This document shows positions 17,647-31,718 of a stretch of DNA of 35,102 nt, one piece after another; positions within the stretch are counted from its first letter, which is position 1; each line of letters starts with the position of its first letter. Below the pieces are notes generated by a model. That model made no database searches and was not told where the DNA came from. It saw only the letters and a program-made list of their open reading frames with translations. The DNA is from Macrostomum lignano. Lineage: Eukaryota. The stretch covers positions 1 through 35,102 of the forward strand of contig NIVC01004781.1 of the NCBI GenBank assembly GCA_002269645.1, read 5' to 3'. The position numbers and the translations under genes were made by a program.

Positions 17647-18099
17647 CATAGCAACATAGCTATCGTGCAGTCCAGCCTCCAGAGCAAATCCTTTATTAAA
17701 GTTACTACTATTAGTAGTAGTAGCGTAGAGCTCCGCAGGCGGCCAGCCGGCATCCAGCAGATCCCGGATGCGCAGCTCCTGGTCGCTGTTAGCCGGCCGG
17801 AAATCCGGCAGCCCCTCGTGGCCCCGGTGCTCATACAACCGATTGGACTGCAGTCGCCAAGCAATATGAGCAGACTGGCCTAGACTATGCGATTCGCGAT
17901 CGTGCTTAGCAACTAAACTGGCGTCGTTAGCAACCGAGGCGGGCAGTTGACTCAAGTTGAGCACAGTCAGACAGGCGAAGACCAATAGCGCGGCCAATGC
18001 GTAAGCCAATAAGCGGCGATTGAAGCCGGAGATGCGGCGTCTCGGAGGCTGGAGATGTCGAAGATGACAGATAACTGTTTGAGGAAACCGAGCTCCAAG
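17647..18099 (-). CDS. FAM20B: FAM20B-like exon 1: basic tail, signal anchor and stem; no in-frame ATG upstream of the anchor
   Basis: Open frame from phase-0 acceptors at 18099 (ttttacAG) or 18048 (catctccAG): PPRRRISGFNRRLLAYALAALLVFACLTVLNL... Phase-0 GTGAGG donor at 17646 fits exon 2. Confidence 0.8.
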
Positions 18100-18216
18100 C
18101 TGTAAAATCTAAGAGCTACTTTAACCTAGAAAAGTAAACTAGAGTAGTTTTTTACGAGCGTAATTAATTTATCAGGTGGCTACAATGGACACAATGGATG
18201 GTAAGACTTAACCACC

Positions 18217-22089: not shown

Positions 22090-23039
22090 TTGCTGCAATG
22101 TAGCATGGGTTAAACAGGTTTAGAAAATTCATTTTCGAATGAGTTACAGAGAGAAACTAAGATTTATAGCCAAATATATAAGCGGAGGAAAATTAAAAAA
22201 AGGATATAAACCTTAATCGGGCAGTTTCAAAGGACCGAGGGCCGGTTACGGTTAGAGAGGCTTATGCCCGCGGGCCGACCCCTGCTCTAGGTGACAAAAT
22301 ATCACGGCACAAGTCGCCGAAAAGTCGTCGAAGACTCAATTCAAGATGGTTTACTGTTTGCGACTCTTGGGGCTGTAGAGCCACTGAGTTGCATCTAAAG
22401 CGCAATTGCGTCACTTTATAAATCAGAATCGCATTCTGTGTTTATAAAACAACGATATTTTGTCTACTCAAGTTCTCGTATTACGAGTAGAAAGTTAAGC
22501 GCTAAAACATCGACTCTTGGGACGACTTCTTTTTGCGACTCTTTAAGATTCTACAGCTCGCGTGATGCGCTTTGTGACTTTGAGTTTACAGTAAACACCA
22601 GCAAGTTTAAGGACAGCTGTTATCCATTAATAAATAAACATTTGCTTAGACAAACAGTTTTTTCGTGCAAGGAAGAGAATGAATAGTTAATAGGTGTGTA
22701 AGCGTAAGGGAATTTATATTAGGTTAGCAATCCAAATAGCCAAGGAAGAACAACGTGAACTATAAAATGGATTGTGCAAGGAAGATGAGGAAAATAATTT
22801 TATCTAGATCAAATTCACGTACTTTGCCTTGCGGCTTTTTCTGCGCTTTAGGAGCCATTGGCGTATTTTACTAAACTGTATGTCTCAAACTTTACTCAAT
22901 ATAATATTATTAGGGAAAATTATTGCAAGCTACTGCAAGTAGCAAGATGAGGGCACTAGCAGAAATACAAAAAATGCACCGGGTTTTTATCAATCATTTG
23001 AAAGCCAGCATAAAATGCTGATTAAACTGATTAAATTGA

Positions 23040-23520
23040 CACTCTGGGAGGCTGGCCGAGCAACTGAGGACCTGGAAGGCTGCCCCAGCCACTAAGGATC
23101 TGTGAGGCTGGCCGAGCAACTGAGGATCTGGGAGGCTGCCCCAGCCACTGAGGATCTGGGAGGCTGGCCGAGCAACTGAGGATCTGGGAGGCTGCCCCAG
23201 CCACTGAGGATCTGTGAGGCTGGCCGAGCAACTGAGGACCTGGAAGGCTGGCCCAGCAACTGAGGATCTGGGAGGCTGGCCCAGCAACTGAGGATCTGGG
23301 AGGCTGGCTCAGCAACTGAGTATCTGGGAGGCTGGCCCAGCAACTGAGGATCTGGGAGGCTGCCCCAGCAACTGAGGATCTGGGAGGCTGGCCCAGCAAC
23401 TGTGGATCTGGGAGGCTGGACCAGCAACTGTGGATCTGGGAGGCTGGCCCAGCAACTGGGGATTTGGGAGACTGGCCCAGCAAATGAGGATCTGGGAGGC
23501 TGGACCAGCAACTGAGGATT
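23040..23520. repeat. 28-bp minisatellite GGAGGCTGGCCCAGCAACTGAGGATCTG, 3' of MRPL45
   Basis: About 17 tandem units. Confidence 0.96.
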
Positions 23521-23787
23521 TGAGAGTTATTTACAATAAACTTACGATAAAAAATGAAATTATAAATAAAAACGAATACGGAAAAACATTTTATTAACAA
23601 ATATTAATAGCAAGGCAAATTTCGGTTTACTTTCTGAAAATTTAAGCTACGCCAATAACATTACTTCAATACTAATTGAAATCATATTCGATATAGATAC
23701 TAAAAGCATTAAATTGAAATAGAATTTTCAGATTTAAGTCGAATATTTTAAACAAACAAAAAACAACTGCACCAAATCGATTGCATA

Positions 23788-24132
23788 TCAAGCAGCCTGA
23801 TCGTAGTAGCGAAATGTGGGCAACAGGGGCAGCCGGTTATCCTTAGACTGGTAGCGCCCGTGCAGCAGCCACTGGTGAAACTCGGCAGTTGCGTTACATT
23901 CGTACACGGGGAATTCCACCAGCTCGCGCGGAGTCTCCCACGAGCCGAGGATCAGCCGGCCGAACCTGTCAAATATTGCCCGGCGCTGTCTGAGGTGAAC
24001 GCGCACAGTGGCTTGAACAAATTGCAGATCTCGACCGATTTCTTGTTTAGCAAATTTCATTATCTTCGGCTCGCTGACTACTGACAGTAGTTCGAAGCGG
24101 TACGACCGGTTTAGAATGTCGTCCGTCATGCA
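23788..24132 (-). CDS. MRPL45: MRPL45 (mL45, Tim44-like) last exon
   Basis: VQATVRVHLRQRRAIFDRFGRLILGSWETPRELVEFPVYE matches [25 protein letters not shown]...PKDVLEYVVFE. Phase-0 ttttccAG acceptor; AATAAA at 23595-23590. Confidence 0.93.
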   Translation of the reverse strand, partial: CMTDDILNRSYRFELLSVVSEPKIMKFAKQEIGRDLQFVQATVRVHLRQRRAIFDRFGRLILGSWETPRELVEFPVYECNATAEFHQWLLHGRYQSKDNRLPLLPTFRYYDQAA

Positions 24133-24169
24133 CTGGAAAAATTGATAGGAGAAAATGGTGGGAAGCTGG

Positions 24170-24660
24170 GATCAACTGAGGATCTGGGAGGCTGAGTGGC
24201 AAAGCAACTGAGGATTTGGGAGGCTGGTCCTGCCCAGCAACTGAGAATCTGTGAGGCTGGCCCAGAAACTGAGGATCTGTGAGGTTGACCCAGAAACTGA
24301 GGATCTGAGGCTGGCCCAGCAACTGAGGATATGTGAGGCTGGTGGCCTAGCAACTGAGGATATGGGAGGCTGGTGGCCTAGCAACTGAGGATATGGGAGG
24401 CTGGTGGCCCAGCAACTGAGGATATGGGAGGCTGGCCCAGCAACTGAGGATCTGTGAGGCTGGTGGCCTAGCAACTGAGGATATGGGAGGCTGGCCCAGC
24501 AACTGAGGATCTGGGAGGCTGGCCCAGCAACTGAGGATCTGGGAGGCTGGCCCAGCAACTGAGGATCTGGGAAGCTGGTGTCCCAGCAACTGAGGATCTG
24601 GGAGGCTGGCCCAGCAACTGTGGATCTGGGAGGCTGGCCCGGCAAATAAGGATTTGGGAG
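24170..24660. repeat. Same 28-bp minisatellite family (plus 31-bp GGCTGGTGG variants) in MRPL45 intron 2
   Basis: Unit shared with 23040-23520, same orientation. Confidence 0.95.
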
Positions 24661-24718
24661 GTTTAGCAAAGCTCTTAAGCAAAAATTAACAAGAAAGCAT
24701 TCAATTATCGATTTATAC

Positions 24719-24776
24719 CTTGAATCCTCGCGGTGTCAAATGATTTTCAAGTAGATTTTCGGCATTCTTATTAAGA
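24719..24776 (-). CDS. MRPL45: MRPL45 58-nt internal exon (not in ORF track)
   Basis: atttcAG and GTATAA boundaries; phase 2 in, phase 0 out, exactly bridging the neighbouring exons. Reads (D)LNKNAENLLENHLTPRGFK. Confidence 0.82.
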
Positions 24777-24872
24777 CTGAAATGTGTTGAGATTGATATC
24801 AGTTCAAGATGAATAACACAGAAGTTTTAGCAAAAAAAGGAAACAATACGGCAGCAGAGCCGATATACTCAC

Positions 24873-25375
24873 TCCTGCAGCTGCTCATTAACAGACACAT
24901 AGTCATCCTGCAACAGGCGGGCCAGCTCCTCCTTGCCACCGCTAGGAATCAGATCATTATTCTTCAATAGATTCTCCGCCTCTCTATGCGAACTTTTCGG
25001 CTTCTTCTGGTCCCAGAGTCTGGCGGTTTTATTCACCAGACTGCGCAGGCCGCTGCCCTCTACAGCGTCAGCTTCTTCCATTGGTTCGAAGATCCGATCG
25101 GATGACCGATGGAACAGGCTGCCGTGCAGGAATGGCAGAGTCTGTATCTGACTGTGCGACTGCATCAGTTTAATTCGATCTGGCATACTGCGCTGCCGGC
25201 CGAATTCATCTTCAAACCAAACGCTGGGCCGATTGCGCAGCTCCGGCCCGAATTCGTGCACTCTTAATTGGCGAATTATTTTAAAGCGCGGATGCCACGG
25301 CTTGTGGCGAGCGTAGCGGACTGGCTGGAAGCCTAGCAGGATTCGGCCGCAGCCAATACAGGAGGAGGCTGAGGC
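24873..25375 (-). CDS. MRPL45: MRPL45 first coding exon; begins at a phase-0 acceptor with no ATG
   Basis: ctaac branch site and aacttgcAG|GCC TCA GCC. Reads ASASSCIGCGRILLGFQPVRYARHKPWHPRFK...; GTGAGT donor at 24872. Confidence 0.88.
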
Positions 25376-27840
25376 CTGCAAGTTAAACGAACAGGTAGTT
25401 AGGTCAGGTATCAAAAAGGGTATTTATTACAATAGGTGTATATTTAGAGATTTCATTTAGTTGCTATCTTGGCAATTTTACATCTCAAGGTTTTTAATTC
25501 ATTGAATTCCAATAATTCAGAACAAAAACTTAATTGTAACAAACCTAGATTGACTAGAGGCCAATTAAACTAAAAACTATTGGACTACAGTCTTGAAATT
25601 GCATTTGAAAAAAGTAATAGGTTTTTACCTCAGAATTATATGTTGCACTAACTTTATTTTGTAAAGTATTTTATAAGCCAAGTTATTAATGCATATACTT
25701 TCAATGCTTTTGTTTTCAATAAATGTATGCAATTTATTGTATAAATATACTATTACATTAGACTTTCTGGCACTAAAATGCAAAATTGCATCTAAGGTCT
25801 AATTTCAAGATGCGATTTGAAGTCACATTGTTATATAACTCCCCTATTCATGAATGCATAACACCCAGCTAAGCTAGCCAATCTGACTTAGCCAAGGTAA
25901 ATTGCAAAAATGCCCACCCAAAAATTACTACTATTAAACAAAACAATGAAAATTTTTGTTTAAATTATTTAAATCATTGTTATAAATTATTTAAATCATT
26001 GTTTAAATTATTAAACAATGAAATGTGGAAGCAGATGGATATTACCAATTTTTGTCCAATTTTTATATTGGATAAAGCTGCTCACCAAATATTGGGTACA
26101 TTGTCTAATTAAATAAAGGTCAATATCAGCAGTAAGTATTAGATATTTATTTGATTTGCCTATGCATTTTGTCACATCTTAGATATCTTCAAGGTCAAAA
26201 TTTATTTGAACCAAACAAAATGTATCAGCAACTCAAATAATTAACTAATACTTAATGTTGATATTGACCTTTATTTATCTACTCTTCATTAAGCGAGCCA
26301 CTTTACCTGATTTCTACATTGTCTAATTATTTTAGTTTTTTTGTCCAAATCTCAATCAATTTCTTGTCCATTTCCAATCTAGATAAGAAATGATAAGAAA
26401 AATGTATAATCTTTCATCTAGTCTATCTAAATTGCAGTAAAAAATTGAATGCAAGGCATTTGAAACAAACAAAAAATGGCTTGCAAGGTAAAATGCACAA
26501 ATTTAAGCTATACAAATGCTTTCCCTTTTATTTGCTCTTGTTTGAGGAAGATGTGCTATAGCAGCTTTGGCAAATGTAAGATGACATTAAAATCAGCAGT
26601 TATCTTAGCACTTATCTATTCTATTGAGGGTTTATTGTGATCTAGATTATAATAGAAGGCAACATTAGATGTCAAAATCAATAGACAAATGAGATAGAAG
26701 TGCATGATATTCCTATTTACTTTCTTACATCTGCAAATGTTTCAAATATTACTAAGCTTAAAAGTGAGAATGAGTTGTAACATATGTTGTACAACCTACT
26801 TTACTCAAGATGATCAGCATATAGACTTATATCCTAGTAAACTATAGTCTCCTAGAGGCCATTCCATGGAAAATTCCAGCATGCAAGAGCCTTTGGTATC
26901 CAGTGTATGGCATGTATTGCATATAAGACAAGAAGACTAAGCAAATTTAGACTAAACAAAGTGTAAATACATAATTTTTTTGCAATGATTTAACAAATTT
27001 TAAAGAAGTGGCAAACCTATTTTTGCAAAATTTTGAAGCTTAACATTTTATTTTTTTATAAATATAATACAAAGATATAAGTATGAATTTAAGTCAGTAA
27101 ATTAAAAGTTCATATTCTAATAGACTTTTTGTTTTGATTGATGTTTCATAAAATCATCACTCAGTTTCAAAATATACTCTTTCTTGCTGTTTAGAGGTTA
27201 ACCCATAGCCTGGATCATGCTGGGTGCTCACCCAAAGAAAAATTGAATATAGAAAAATGCATGCCAAAAATGTAGTATATGCCTATTCTAAAAAATATAC
27301 TGGTCATGCATTTTTGCAGCTTACCTTGGCTGGGCCCTTGCCAGCCAGCTGGATCGACTTGGTGTTACATCTGGATGATCAATATAAGGACAAAACAAGC
27401 TTAATTATGGTGTAAGGATTAAAATTCTATATGTGGCATATTTTTATTTTGAGAATAAAAGAAAAACTATAATTAGTTATATTTTTTAAAGGACTAATGC
27501 AAAATAATCTACAAGAAAAATGCTAAAAATGACATATAAAGAATGAAAATCCATTGAATAGTTCAAAAGTTATGTTAATTATAACTTGGAAAATCAGACC
27601 TTTTGAGCAAAAAATGATCACATTGCTTTATGGGAAAATTGCATTATGAAAGTATAAAAAAATATGACACTAAAAGTACTTTTTTATTACTTGACCAAAA
27701 TTCAAAAGTGAGGTGTCTTTTTACTCATACAAATAAGATCTATTATACTACATAGTTAAAAATAAGAAATTTAGAAGTTTATAAAAATCTCACTGGACCT
27801 CCTACTACCATGTGACTCTGGTCTCTGGGTCATTTGCAAA

Positions 27841-28436
27841 AGGCAGTGCTTATCCCCACGGTACCATAGGAATAATTTCTGTCTTATCCCAACGGTACCG
27901 TGCGAATAATTTTCTGCTTATCCGCATGGCACACTGAGGAGATAGCTGCCCTATCTTCTACATATGCCGTGCAAATAATTTTCTGCTTATCCGCACGGCA
28001 CACTGACGAGATAGCTGCCCTACATGTCCTCTGTTTTATTCCCTCTGCTTTACTAGCTGCCCTATCTGCTACATATATATGCTGTGCTGTGCGTGAATAG
28101 TTTATAGCTTATTGAAAGGGAATTTGAACTGAGGATACTAAGAAGCTGTTGATCTTGATGTAAAAACTCGAATAAGTTCTAGACTAGTATATGCATGTGT
28201 AAATGCGTGTTATTCTGCTTTACTGATACCCTTCTGTATACTTATTCAACAATAATTCCACAAAGTTGTTCTATTGCACTCAAATCGTATGTACTAAACT
28301 TCCCACACGGCATATATAGAAGATAGGGCAGCTATCTCGTCAGTGTGCCATGCGGATAAGCAGAAAATTATTCGCACGGTACCGTTGGAATAAGACAGAA
28401 ATTATTCCTACGGTACCGTGGGGATAAGCACTGCCT
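27841..28436. mobile_element. Non-autonomous foldback/MITE-like element with ~130 bp terminal inverted repeats
   Basis: AGGCAGTGCTTATCCCCACGGTACC...TATCTTCTA.ATATGCCGTG at left and its near-perfect reverse complement at 28306-28436. Internal ~57 bp subterminal duplication; no ORF. Confidence 0.85.
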
Positions 28437-29891
28437 ATGCAAAAAGCTTTATTTAGGGTAGTCTAGTCTTAAAAAGCTAGTCTAGACTTGGATTTTGTAT
28501 GCAGAAACACAAAGTTGAACTGGTCTGCTATAGACAGAACTAAGGTAGCTAGACCATAGACTATAGACTGAACTACCCAAGTCCGGACTAACTAGTCTGG
28601 ACTAACCTTTCTGCATACAGCTGTCTGTCAGCACTTTTATACCTTGGTATATCCTCCCTATAGAAAATTTACCTTGGTGTATCCCCCAATAGGAAATGTC
28701 TGGCTATGCCCCTGCAACTTATTCCAATAAGGCAATTTCATTAATTTAAAATATATATGGCCACTAATATAAGCTAAGTAAAATTTATAGTCTAACTACT
28801 TAAATAGTAGCAACAAAGTAAAAAAGCATTTTATAGTACTTTTATAATGATTAGATGCACTTGACTATAGTCTTTGAGAACCATTTAAAAGCAATTCTTG
28901 TTTAATTATTTTTTACTTAAAAACAGCTTTTATTTTTCAACAAGGGTTGACAAAAAGAGCAACTAAGTTGCAATGCAAAACAAAAGGATCAGGAAAGTTG
29001 CAACAAAAGCAACAAAGTCGCAAAAGGAGCAAACTAAGATACGAAAGAAATTTCTGCTTTAACGCAAACCAGTTACAGCCAAGAAGCCACGTTGGAACTT
29101 GCACATTAAAGGCAAATTGAGACGAAGACTACATATTTGATTGGCGAATACAACCAATCTACATCCTAAATTTTGCGAGTGTAAAACAACATATTTTAAT
29201 GTTTAAATTTTATCATTTTTAACAAAACTTTTTTTTATTAAACATTTTGTTTAAGAAGAAGGTAAGCAAACTGTTTATAAAGCAGAAAACTATTTAAAAA
29301 ACATTATAATAAGATTTTACACTTAAATACTATAATGGCTTTGCTTAAACGAATAACTAAATATATACATTGTAAATAAGCAACGTAAATAATTATAATA
29401 GCAATCGAATGATCCAGGAATATTCTACCGCCGGACTATTCGTCTGCCCTGATTAAATGCAGTGGACTATTCGTCTGCCGGTGCTAAATAGTGAAGACGC
29501 TTTGGTGTTGCAGATTTGCAGACTGATTCCTGCTCTCGGAACTCAACTCGATCGGTTTTCATCTACGGTGTGGACGCACTCAATCGTCTTCTGCTTGAGA
29601 CTGACCAGGAGTCCCCCGTTTCCCTCCCTAGCGTCAACTGCTATTACAGTATCCATGCATCGAGATCTTTTTACTTGCCAATTCCTCTGAATGTGCAGGT
29701 TGGACATGCAGCTCCGAGTTATAATAGATTTATCGTAAAACGATCCAAATGCAACCCAAAAAATCGTTTTTGTCCTATTTGCATGTACATGTATAATTAA
29801 AGTCGTACTTCATGTATACGAGCTAACAAAATTTAACTATAAATGCGACTTCAGGGCTTATATAAGAGCGTAGAGCTGATTATAGCTACTA

Positions 29892-30887
29892 AAAATGCGC
29901 AAATTACACTTACATGTAGTAAACAACATTTTATTAGAATTTTTAAGGTTATTTTTGCATGCTACACACAGTACACACACATGTGCATATTTATGCGCAG
30001 TTATATATGTAATGCAGACCGTCATATTTTCAAAGAAAATTTTCTGTGCCAAACAATTTCCCATGAGTGCAAAATTCACATGAACACAACAATGACATAC
30101 AGTGTAATTGTCAACTTAAAATCATTGTTAGGAAGACTGTGGTTGTCTTCAGTTGAGGTGGACCCGACAAGGGCCGTTTTAGCGAAAGCAAGTGCCATTT
30201 CTATAATATTGTTAATTTGATGGTCTCGTACTCTAACGTCTGCTTATAGTAATGCCCAAGGAATTTTAACAACATTGCGTGTCGACGTTCGTAAAGCCTA
30301 TGTACAATGCGATCGATAATTCCTGTTTTTCAAGTTGGTTTTTCGCGCCGGCCAATAGGAAAGCCGCGCATAATTATGCTAGCCTGAAATTAAGCTTTGT
30401 CGTGCACCCACCCCCAGCCCGCTCGTTATTATAGTCCTGTCTGGCTTGGGGCGCCCCGGGGTTAGTCCTTGTTTTCCGGCCGGCGATCTCTCGCTCTCCC
30501 TCTCCGCTGCGAATAAATATCTGCGTTTCGTTTGAGCGTAGCGCTGGTCGGATGCTTTTTATATCTGGCTCTCGATCGGCCAGTATACCGGGTATGCAGT
30601 AATCTGATATAGCTAGCTGCTAAATGCGCAAAATAACACTTACAGAGTAAACAATTTACATTTTATTTAGAATTTTCTAGGAAAATTTGGCATGTAGCTA
30701 CGCAGTACACACACATGCATATATGTATGATAAATGGTTCATATATGTTTATATGCAGACCGCCATATTTTAAAAGAAACTTTCTGTGCTAATATACAAT
30801 TGGAATTCCTAATGAGTGCTAAATTCCCTGCATGAACACAACAATACTAAGGCGTATATTTTCAACTTAAATCATTGGTAGGATGAC
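29892..30887. repeat. Diverged direct repeat pair (~29892-30137 and ~30622-30887)
   Basis: Collinear shared motifs AAATGCGCAAA, CAGTACACACACATG, ATGCAGACCG, CATGAACACAACAAT and TCAACTTAAA.TCATTG. Confidence 0.8.
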
Positions 30888-31718
30888 ATCTCATTACGAA
30901 CCCCTTAAATGCAATGTACACAAAAAACTCATAGAAAGAGGTGATATATAATTAAAGCTGACGATAGCAATTCAGCTGTTACAATTTCTGATATATTATA
31001 ATATATTGATTGTGTAGCTGAATGAGCTATTGCGGATATCGACCTTTGAAAAATATCGACTGAATATATTTGTAAAAGTTAAATATTAAATCGAGGTAAA
31101 CGGCCTTTATTAAAGAAAAAAAGTTTTTTTGCACTTGTTATAATAGTGTTGCTAGAACTTTTGAAAGCAAGCGAATGAAAATTATATTCACTATAAAAAA
31201 TAAAATTAGTAAATAGGCTCATGCTGGCCGAAAGAATGGGAAAAAGTATGCAATGGATTTGCCCTTATACAATTGTAAATAATTCCAAAAAATATTGCGA
31301 TTCTATTGCAATAATCGAATTTAATGCACTTAAAAAGATAATAAGATTAATAGAAAAATACTGCCGTTATTGATTCTTTTTATGAGTTAAAAATCGAAAA
31401 CTCCTCCGAAAAGCCAGAAATTCGGAAAAAATCAACGTTCAGTTTGAGCAAATAGCTTTGTTACAACAAACTAGTAAAGTACACTTCCTAGGTTAATTTT
31501 GGTTCAATTATTATTTTCTCTTTTTTCATAACGATATAGATAATCTAAAAAATTTTTTCGTGCAATTCCTTTCGTAGCATAAGGCAACTTCATGTTACAC
31601 TGTAACTTCAAAATAGATTTCCCAGATACTAAAGATTTATATACTATAATTAGATGTAGATCGAGTGTTACAGAACAGCTTAAGCATGCATTCAACTGCA
31701 TCAGCAGGTTGCAGTAAT

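What the first reader, a model, noticed from the sequence alone, without database searches (positions are those of the whole stretch)
24873..25395. MRPL45 appears to borrow its start codon from the spliced leader
Seen: the first exon begins at a strong acceptor in phase 0 and has no ATG near its start. Adding a single Met gives MASASSCIGCGRILLGFQPVRY..., a plausible mitochondrial presequence, and a 302-aa protein close to full mL45 length, so no upstream coding exon is needed. Established: flatworm spliced leaders end in AUG that can initiate translation. Inference: trans-splicing is obligatory for producing this protein.
Basis: partly seen in the sequence, partly recalled or inferred. Interest (0 to 1): 0.85.

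Follow-up and report, generated by a model that had tools for sequence, protein, structure and literature searches.

The report
Start codon supplied by spliced leader
A mitochondrial ribosomal protein gene (mL45) of the flatworm Macrostomum lignano has no start codon of its own and most likely takes the AUG at the end of the trans-spliced leader; this mechanism has been documented in flatworms since 2006, so it is a clean example, not a discovery.

Summary
On the minus strand, exon 1 (25375-24873) starts directly after TTGCAG. It is open in phase 0 and has no in-frame ATG until its codon 64 (25186). An in-frame TAA lies 17 codons upstream with no ATG in between. The three-exon gene encodes a divergent mL45. 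The window is Macrostomum lignano contig NIVC01004781.1. That species has a 35-nt spliced leader ending in ...TTGCATG (PMC8629364). The conserved mL45 N-terminal motif (RYARHKPWHPRFKIIRQLR) lies upstream of the first genomic ATG, so an initiator at or before the exon boundary is required. Both public annotations call the protein 5'-partial, and two begin it exactly at this boundary. One of the three genomic copies (L001) reads TGCATG|GCC instead of TTGCAG|GCC, which puts an ATG exactly where the leader would. That is either a real homeolog difference or a trace of RNA-seq polishing. No junction read could be inspected, so trans-splicing at 25375 remains inferred (confidence about 0.8). Initiation from the leader AUG is already known in flatworms (Cheng et al. 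2006). A second gene in this window (Fam20C-like) shows the same pattern. This is a new member of a known kind, of low to moderate interest.

The parts
25376..25426 (-). 3' end of the outron. It runs from the in-frame TAA (25426-25424) through a pyrimidine-rich stretch to the TTGCAG acceptor (AG at 25377-25376). There is no ATG in frame.
   Evidence: The acceptor matches the M. lignano trans-splice motif [T/C]TNCAG (PMC8629364). GC is 0.19-0.30 upstream.
24873..25375 (-). mL45 exon 1 (503 nt). It begins in phase 0 with GCC (Ala) and encodes ASASSC...NEQLQ plus two bases of the next codon.
   Evidence: The NCBI and UniRef protein models begin at or within 15 nt of 25375.
25259..25318 (-). Codons 20-39 of exon 1, RYARHKPWHPRFKIIRQLRV. 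This is the conserved N-terminal basic motif of mL45 (consensus R...KHWxPKFKxLR), and it lies upstream of the first genomic ATG.
   Evidence: Alignment A2. The first 63 aa alone, compared by hhalign with a profile of 13 other mL45 proteins, give E = 5e-05 over residues 16-41.
25184..25186 (-). First in-frame genomic ATG (exon codon 64, MPDRIK...). It is the only plausible internal start, and using it would delete the presequence and the conserved motif.
   Evidence: The N-terminus from this Met has 6 acidic and 4 basic residues in its first 40 aa, whereas the SL-Met N-terminus has none acidic and 8 basic.
25369..25372 (-). Alternative TCAG inside the exon, 7 nt downstream of the acceptor. A leader joined here would put its ATG out of frame, with a stop after 12 codons.
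   Evidence: Read directly from the sequence. CCTCAG does not fit [T/C]TNCAG.
24719..24776 (-). mL45 exon 2 (58 nt). It contains alignment columns conserved across mL45 and is skipped in the 273-aa UniRef models.
23788..24132 (-). mL45 exon 3, including the TGA stop at 23790-23788. It encodes the core of the Tim44-like domain (FDRFGRL...).
29077..29106 (-). GCT|gtaact). I considered it and judged it to be at chance level.
   Evidence: There are 63 phase-0 ATG..GT candidates in the 6.3-kb upstream region. This donor, GTAAC, does not fit the species motif GT[G/A]AG. The segment is conserved in the paralogs no better than its flanks.

Best explanation
The gene is the Macrostomum lignano nuclear gene for mitoribosomal protein mL45. 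Its pre-mRNA begins somewhere in the AT-rich region upstream of 25375. That upstream part (the outron) is removed, and the 35-nt spliced leader CGGTCTCTTACTGCGAAGACTCAATTTATTGCATG is trans-spliced onto the TTGCAG| acceptor, giving a mature mRNA that reads ...UUGCAUG|GCCUCAGCC.... The last three bases of the leader then act as the initiation codon, in frame with exon 1. The product is a 302-aa precursor, M-ASASSCIGCGRILLGFQPVRYARHKPWHPRF..., whose first 41 residues are basic and free of acidic residues, as in a mitochondrial presequence. Shown here: the gene structure, the reading frame, the absence of a genomic ATG, the position of the conserved motif, and the species' SL sequence (the last from the literature). 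Inferred: that the SL is joined at 25375 and that ribosomes start at its AUG.
For: 1. The organism is M. lignano. Protein P0001 is PAA46601.1, and the window is the whole contig NIVC01004781.1. Its SL ends in ATG (PMC8629364), and Wiberg et al. describe that ATG as a likely start codon (PMC10468722).
2. The frame is closed by TAA 17 codons upstream of the acceptor with no ATG in between, and the first exon ATG is codon 64.
3. Eleven of the 91 HMMER hits align from query residues 12-26 onward. The motif R..KHWxPKFKxLR aligns to exon codons 20-39. The first 63 aa alone hit that motif in an independent profile at E = 5e-05. A start at codon 64 would therefore remove conserved protein.
4. With one added Met, 20 residues precede the motif. 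Orthologs have about 13-60, so no extra coding exon is needed.
5. The acceptor TTGCAG fits the trans-splice motif [T/C]TNCAG.
6. The Mlig_3_7 annotation cuts transcripts where SL-trimmed reads pile up (PMC5730564). All three copies are annotated as 5'-partial. In L001 the CDS starts at the base immediately after a genomic ATG, which is what a boundary set by SL-trimmed reads would give. The independent ML2/UniRef models also start at ASASS.
7. Copy L001 reads AACTGCATG|GCC where the window and L002 read AACTTGCAG|GCC. The four changed bases make its last six bases identical to the SL 3' end (TGCATG).
8. All four CDS differences between the window and L002 are synonymous, so the copy looks functional.
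9. SL-AUG initiation is established in flatworms. [quoted passage not shown] 2006, as reported in PMC9851317).
Against: No RNA read or cDNA carrying the SL-exon junction could be inspected. The annotated 5' ends are ragged, at 0, 9 and 15 nt into the exon in the three copies, so they do not pin the junction to the base. An in-frame SL AUG is expected by chance in one of every three trans-spliced genes. The presequence call rests only on residue composition. The leader AUG has a T at -3, which is a weak Kozak context, although +4 is G. If the L001 ATG is real, the organism can make the protein from that copy without using the SL's ATG.
Confidence: 0.8

Rival explanations
1. The acceptor at 25375 is a cis-splice acceptor. 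A short upstream exon carrying a genomic ATG (for example 29106-29077, MCKFQRGFLA) supplies the start codon.
For: The 29106-29077 candidate is in phase 0, adds a basic and plausible presequence, and is intact in all three copies. Nothing in the DNA forbids such an exon.
Against: The 6.3-kb upstream region holds 63 such phase-0 ATG..GT candidates, so their presence is expected by chance. The candidate donor GCT|GTAACT does not match the species motif GT[G/A]AG. Its conservation equals that of its non-coding flanks. Neither the genome-guided NCBI annotation nor the ML2/UniRef models found any upstream exon in any of the three copies; all are 5'-partial. The N-terminus already has ortholog-like length without an extra exon.
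Confidence: 0.1
2. Translation starts at the first genomic ATG (25186, exon codon 64). The upstream part of exon 1 is then 5' UTR, whether or not a leader is attached.
For: This ATG has a purine at -3 (cagtATGc). If the SL were joined at the alternative TCAG (25369), its AUG would be out of frame and would open only a 12-codon uORF.
Against: The 63 codons upstream are open in frame and contain the conserved mL45 N-terminal motif. The N-terminus from this Met has 6 acidic residues in its first 40 and does not look like a presequence. All four window-versus-L002 substitutions are synonymous, and two of them lie in this upstream stretch.
Confidence: 0.04
3. The window copy lacks a start codon because it is a redundant or decaying duplicate. 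The working gene is the L001 homeolog, which has a genomic ATG.
For: L001 reads TGCATG|GCC. M. lignano carries large duplications, and three copies of this gene exist.
Against: The window and L002 copies keep an intact 301-codon frame and canonical splice sites, and they differ only synonymously. Two of the three copies share the acceptor form. The L001 bases may be an artefact of polishing the assembly with RNA-seq (PMC5730564). The ML2 model that corresponds to the L001-type allele (P0005, with the RGLQF variant) also lacks an initial Met.
Confidence: 0.04
4. Non-AUG initiation occurs on an untrimmed transcript, for example at the in-frame TTG at 25414 or at a CTG within exon 1.
For: An in-frame TTG lies 13 codons upstream of the acceptor.
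Against: Near-cognate initiation is inefficient in eukaryotes (general knowledge). The region is an AT-rich sequence flanking an acceptor and shows no coding character. There is no positive evidence for this reading.
Confidence: 0.02

Closest known systems
[quoted passage not shown]
   Same: A flatworm SL ending in AUG is joined in frame to an exon that has no AUG of its own before conserved coding sequence, so the leader supplies the Met.
   Different: The species (a free-living macrostomid) and the gene (mL45) differ. In Schistosoma the junctions were seen in cDNAs and translation was tested; here both steps are inferred from genomic sequence and annotation.
slORFs: open reading frames created by SL addition (slORFfinder, PMC9851317)
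   Same: This is the same class: an ORF whose start codon lies in the leader.
   Different: slORFfinder calls such ORFs from SL-containing RNA-seq reads and ribosome footprints, and neither was available here. In this case the slORF is the main conserved protein, not an alternative ORF.
Mammalian mitoribosomal protein mL45 (PDB 3j7y chain d, 4ce4 chain i, 6gaw chain Bi)
   Same: They share a homologous C-terminal Tim44-like domain (E = 6e-13 directly, 2e-94 through the family profile), the N-terminal basic motif, and a similar length (302 versus 306 aa).
   Different: The flatworm protein is only about 25-30% identical and scores below the Pfam Tim44 and MBA1 thresholds on its own. The conserved PPEGDGK stretch is degenerate (EEADAVEGSG). 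Mammalian genes encode their own ATG.
SL sequence found at the 5' end of a protein-coding gene in M. lignano assemblies (Mlig013257.g1, noted in PMC8629364)
   Same: Leader-derived bases lie in genomic sequence directly in front of a first exon, as in the TGCATG|GCC of copy L001.
   Different: In that case the whole SL is present. In L001 only the last 5-6 bases match, and the rest is ordinary outron.

Membership tests
SL-AUG-initiated flatworm mRNAs (Cheng et al. 2006 type) | The organism has a spliced leader whose 3' end is AUG | tested here: met
   The window is M. lignano. Its SL is CGGTCTCTTACTGCGAAGACTCAATTTATTGCATG (PMC8629364).
SL-AUG-initiated flatworm mRNAs (Cheng et al. 2006 type) | The mRNA is trans-spliced to the SL at the acceptor in question | not testable with these tools
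   Only indirect evidence exists: the acceptor fits [T/C]TNCAG, SL-read-based annotation boundaries fall at the junction, and L001 carries TGCATG there. No reads or cDNAs were accessible.
SL-AUG-initiated flatworm mRNAs (Cheng et al. 2006 type) | The SL AUG is in frame with the main ORF, with no intervening stop | tested here: met
   The exon starts in phase 0 at 25375, and ATG + GCC TCA... reads through 301 codons.
SL-AUG-initiated flatworm mRNAs (Cheng et al. 2006 type) | No genomic AUG can give the conserved N-terminus | tested here: met
   There is a TAA 17 codons upstream with no ATG in between. The first exon ATG is codon 64, downstream of the conserved motif at codons 20-39. An upstream cis exon cannot be formally excluded.
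SL-AUG-initiated flatworm mRNAs (Cheng et al. 2006 type) | Translation actually begins at the SL AUG | not testable with these tools
   This needs ribosome profiling, N-terminal proteomics or a reporter assay.
Mitoribosomal protein mL45 (MRPL45) | Sequence homology to mL45 chains of solved mitoribosomes, with mL45 as the best and only significant PDB family | tested here: met
   phmmer gives E = 6e-13 to 6gaw_Bi and 4ce4_i, and all nine significant hits are mL45. The homolog profile gives E = 2e-94.
Mitoribosomal protein mL45 (MRPL45) | C-terminal Tim44-like domain (Pfam PF04280) | tested here: inconclusive
   The protein alone scores 13.4 bits against Tim44 and 16.6 bits against MBA1, both below the gathering cut-offs. 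However, 13 of the 14 members of its homolog alignment match PF04280, with a best E of 1e-26.
Mitoribosomal protein mL45 (MRPL45) | N-terminal mitochondrial presequence followed by the basic KHWxPKFKxLR motif | tested here: met
   The motif aligns. The first 41 residues have 8 basic and no acidic residues. This is a composition check only; no targeting predictor was run.

The most novel reading that the evidence does not exclude
The TGCATG|GCC of the homeologous copy L001 is real. In that case copies of one gene within a single polyploid genome differ in where the start codon comes from: two take it from the spliced leader (TTGCAG|GCC) and one encodes it (TGCATG GCC). Because the leader ends in GCAUG and acceptors end in GCAG, a single-base indel (CAG|G <-> CATG G) switches between the two states without changing the protein. 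That would be a caught-in-the-act example of how genes become dependent on, or escape from, trans-splicing.
Probability: 0.3. Interest if true: 0.55.

Novelty: new member of a known kind. Interest (0 to 1): 0.25.

Why it matters
For the biology, this adds a conserved housekeeping gene (mitoribosomal mL45) from a free-living, early-branching flatworm to the set of mRNAs that need the leader's AUG. That fits the idea that the conserved 3' AUG of flatworm leaders is functional. The practical value is larger. In the public M. lignano annotation (GCA_002269645.1), this protein and its two paralogs are labelled 'partial' only because the leader, including its ATG, was trimmed before mapping. A second gene in the same 35-kb window (Fam20C-like) shows the same pattern. 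Many 'partial' M. lignano proteins are therefore probably complete once the SL Met is added. The L001 variant also warns that polishing an assembly with RNA-seq may write leader bases into it. If the variant is real, it offers a test case for how start codons move between leader and genome.

Tried and rejected
- The protein collections hold only genome-derived models of this gene. There were two clusters with five members and no transcript-derived entry. No close ortholog from other Macrostomum species appeared; the next hit has 25% identity. Conservation of the SL dependence across species therefore could not be tested.
- A scan of metagenome contigs for the 27-nt SL-exon junction found nothing.
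- The window contains no SL-like sequence or SL RNA gene: the 18-mer with up to 3 mismatches gave 0 hits.
- I enumerated upstream ATG mini-exons. There are 63 phase-0 candidates, so this class cannot be told apart from chance on sequence alone.
- I looked for a second clear case of SL bases written into the genome. The Fam20C acceptor in L001 differs by a single base (CAG to CTG) and does not carry the further SL bases. The ankyrin ATG context (AGCATG) is identical in all three copies. Neither settles whether the L001 TGCATG is an artefact or real.
- The literature on the M. lignano transcriptome assemblies (PMC5730564, PMC5816591) does not discuss use of the SL ATG.

Full report
**What is in the sequence.** The feature lies on the minus strand. 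The sequence reads ...cctgttcgtttaacttgcag|GCCTCAGCCTCCTCCTGTATTGGC..., with the AG at 25377-25376 and the exon starting at 25375. From 25375 the frame is open and translates as ASASSCIGCGRILLGFQPVRYARHKPWHPRFKIIRQLRV... down to a GT donor at 24872. Two further exons, 24776-24719 and 24132-23788, have canonical borders. Together the three exons give 906 nt, which is 301 codons plus a stop, or 302 aa with one added Met. Exon 1 has in-frame ATGs only at 25186, 25165 and 25081, so the first is its 64th codon. Upstream of the acceptor the same frame meets TAA at 25426-25424 with no ATG in between. GC content falls from 0.55-0.59 inside the exon to 0.19-0.30 just upstream.

**Identity of the gene and the organism.** The protein matches only mL45 among solved structures, at E = 6e-13 over residues 170-282 against residues 152-265 of the 306-aa mammalian protein. 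A full HMMER scan of 1.84 billion representative proteins found 91 relatives. A profile of 14 of them hits mammalian mL45 at E = 2e-94, and 13 of the 14 carry the Pfam Tim44-like domain. On its own the flatworm protein scores below the Pfam thresholds, so it is a divergent member of the family. The word-indexed search returned the protein itself as PAA46601.1, 'hypothetical protein BOX15_Mlig023218g1, partial [Macrostomum lignano]'. The window is the whole contig NIVC01004781.1 of assembly GCA_002269645.1. On the minus strand the gene order is ankyrin-repeat gene, a 6.3-kb gap, mL45, RPL6e, then a Fam20C-like gene.

**The leader.** M. lignano has a single 35-nt spliced leader, CGGTCTCTTACTGCGAAGACTCAATTTATTGCATG. 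It is attached to about 30% of genes, and the motif enriched at trans-splice acceptors is [T/C]TNCAG (PMC8629364). The acceptor here, TTGCAG, fits that motif. The nearby TCAG at 25372-25369 (CCTCAG) does not fit, and a leader joined there would be out of frame. [quoted passage not shown]

**Why an initiator at the exon boundary is needed.** Eleven of the HMMER hits align from query residues 12-26 onward. In the multiple alignment, a motif conserved across mL45 proteins (consensus R...KHWxPKFKxLRxxKV) aligns with RYARHKPWHPRFKIIRQLRV, which is exon codons 20-39 (window 25318-25259). The first 63 residues alone find that motif in a profile built without the query, with hhalign E = 5e-05. Initiation at 25186 would therefore delete conserved protein. 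It would also leave an N-terminus with 6 acidic and 4 basic residues in its first 40 positions. The N-terminus starting from the leader Met has 8 basic and no acidic residues there, and its first acidic residue is at position 42. With a single added Met, 20 residues precede the motif. Orthologs have roughly 13 to 60, so no missing coding exon is required.

**Indirect evidence for the junction.** The Mlig_3_7 annotation was built by trimming the leader from SL-containing reads, mapping them, and cutting transcript models at the resulting peaks (TBONE; PMC5730564). The genome holds three copies of this gene, and all three are annotated as 5'-partial. I fetched the other two copies with 10 kb of flank as L001 and L002. 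The annotated CDS starts 0, 9 and 15 nt into the exon in L001, the window and L002 respectively. The independent ML2-based UniRef models also begin at ASASS. In L001 the annotated CDS begins at the base immediately after a genomic ATG. That is hard to explain unless the boundary came from reads whose leader, ATG included, had been trimmed off.

**The L001 variant.** In the alignment of the three upstream regions, the window and L002 read GTTTAACTTGCAG|GCC, while L001 reads GTTTAACTGCATG|GCC. Four adjacent positions differ. As a result, the six bases before the exon in L001 are identical to the leader's 3' end (TGCATG), the AG acceptor is gone, and an in-frame ATG sits exactly where the leader would place one. 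There are two possible readings.

- *Artefact.* The assembly was polished with Pilon using RNA-seq as well as DNA reads (PMC5730564). Reads carrying a short leader overhang could have overwritten the genomic bases. In that case the variant is a fossil of the SL-exon junction. The ML2 model of the L001-type allele (P0005) also lacks an initial Met, which leans weakly towards this reading.
- *Real difference.* L001 is the more diverged copy, at 94-97% identity in its flanks against 98.6% for L002, so the difference could be genuine. A single-base indel interconverts CAG|G and CATG G.

Either way, the variant supports M-ASASS as the N-terminus. I could not decide between the two readings.

**Rivals.**

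- *Upstream cis exon carrying an ATG.* This cannot be excluded from DNA alone. However, the 6.3-kb upstream region offers 63 phase-0 ATG..GT candidates by chance. Its conservation in the paralogs matches that of its flanks. No annotation found an upstream exon.
- *Initiation at 25186.* The conserved motif and the N-terminal composition both argue against it.
- *Decaying duplicate.* This is unlikely. The window and L002 differ at four CDS positions, all synonymous, and L001 adds only two replacements.
- *Near-cognate initiation in the unspliced RNA.* Nothing supports it.

**Comparison with what is known.** The 3'-terminal AUG is conserved across flatworm leaders. Cheng et al. (2006) showed that it serves as initiator methionine. 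[quoted passage not shown] The present case has the same anatomy in another flatworm lineage and another gene. It is a new member of a known kind. What I did not find in the M. lignano papers I read is an explicit statement that 5'-partial models in the public annotation are often complete proteins lacking only the leader's Met.

**Generality within the window.** The Fam20C-like gene is also annotated as 5'-partial, with its CDS starting at window 18039 on the minus strand. Its frame is open for 23 codons upstream to a stop with no ATG. There is no Met in its first 100 residues, yet a signal-anchor (RRLLAYALAALLVFACLTVL) lies near the start. Two acceptors that fit the motif, with exon starts at 18099 and 18048, are both in phase with the leader's ATG. 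Two of the four genes in this contig therefore show the pattern.

**Verdict.** The mechanism is already established, so interest is low to moderate (0.25). The most novel reading left open is a real difference between homeologs in where the start codon comes from (probability about 0.3).

Noticed in passing
window 18039-18111, minus strand (L003 16992-17064): The Fam20C-like gene is also annotated as 5'-partial. There is no in-frame ATG between an upstream stop and its signal-anchor. Two [T/C]TNCAG acceptors (exon starts at 18099 and 18048) are both in phase with the leader ATG, so this is probably a second SL-AUG-dependent gene. In L001 the second acceptor reads CTCCTG instead of CTCCAG.
   Followed up: partly
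L001:9995-10000 (NIVC01001332.1), homologous to window 25381-25376: This copy reads TGCATG where the window and L002 read TTGCAG. That gives a genomic in-frame ATG, removes the AG acceptor, and matches the last 6 nt of the spliced leader. The assembly was polished with RNA-seq, so this may be an artefact, or it may be a real homeolog difference.
   Followed up: partly
window 22858-23788, minus strand: The mL45 stop lies about 930 nt from the RPL6e ATG on the same strand, and 484 nt of that gap is a 28-nt minisatellite. The repeat-adjusted distance falls below the 1-kb operon criterion used for M. lignano (PMC8629364), so mL45 and RPL6e may form an operon.
   Followed up: no
window 23043-23526 and 24173-24661: The same 28-nt minisatellite (CAACTGAGGATCTGGGAGGCTGGCCCAG) occupies both mL45 intron 2 and the region just past its 3' end. 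It produces long spurious ORFs in several frames. The window holds at least 15 such arrays, with units of 6-33 nt.
   Followed up: partly
window 23788-25375 compared with L001 and L002: The three mL45 coding sequences differ at only 4-6 of 906 nt, while their flanks differ by 1.4-6%. The L002 CDS shares all four of its differences with L001, yet its upstream region is nearly identical to the window. This mosaic suggests gene conversion, recombination, or homogenisation by RNA-seq polishing.
   Followed up: partly
UniRef A0A1I8G4R5 and A0A1I8J845 (P0002, P0005): The ML2-based models are named 'L39' and 'L50' although the family is mL45. They also skip exon 2 and the end of exon 1 (28 aa), which removes conserved alignment columns.
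   Followed up: yes
window about 28436-31127 (L003 3976-6667): This 2.7-kb stretch of the mL45 upstream region is 97.6% identical to L001, while the neighbouring segments are about 94.5% identical. The cause is unknown; it could be a regulatory region, a transposable element or a conversion tract.
   Followed up: no
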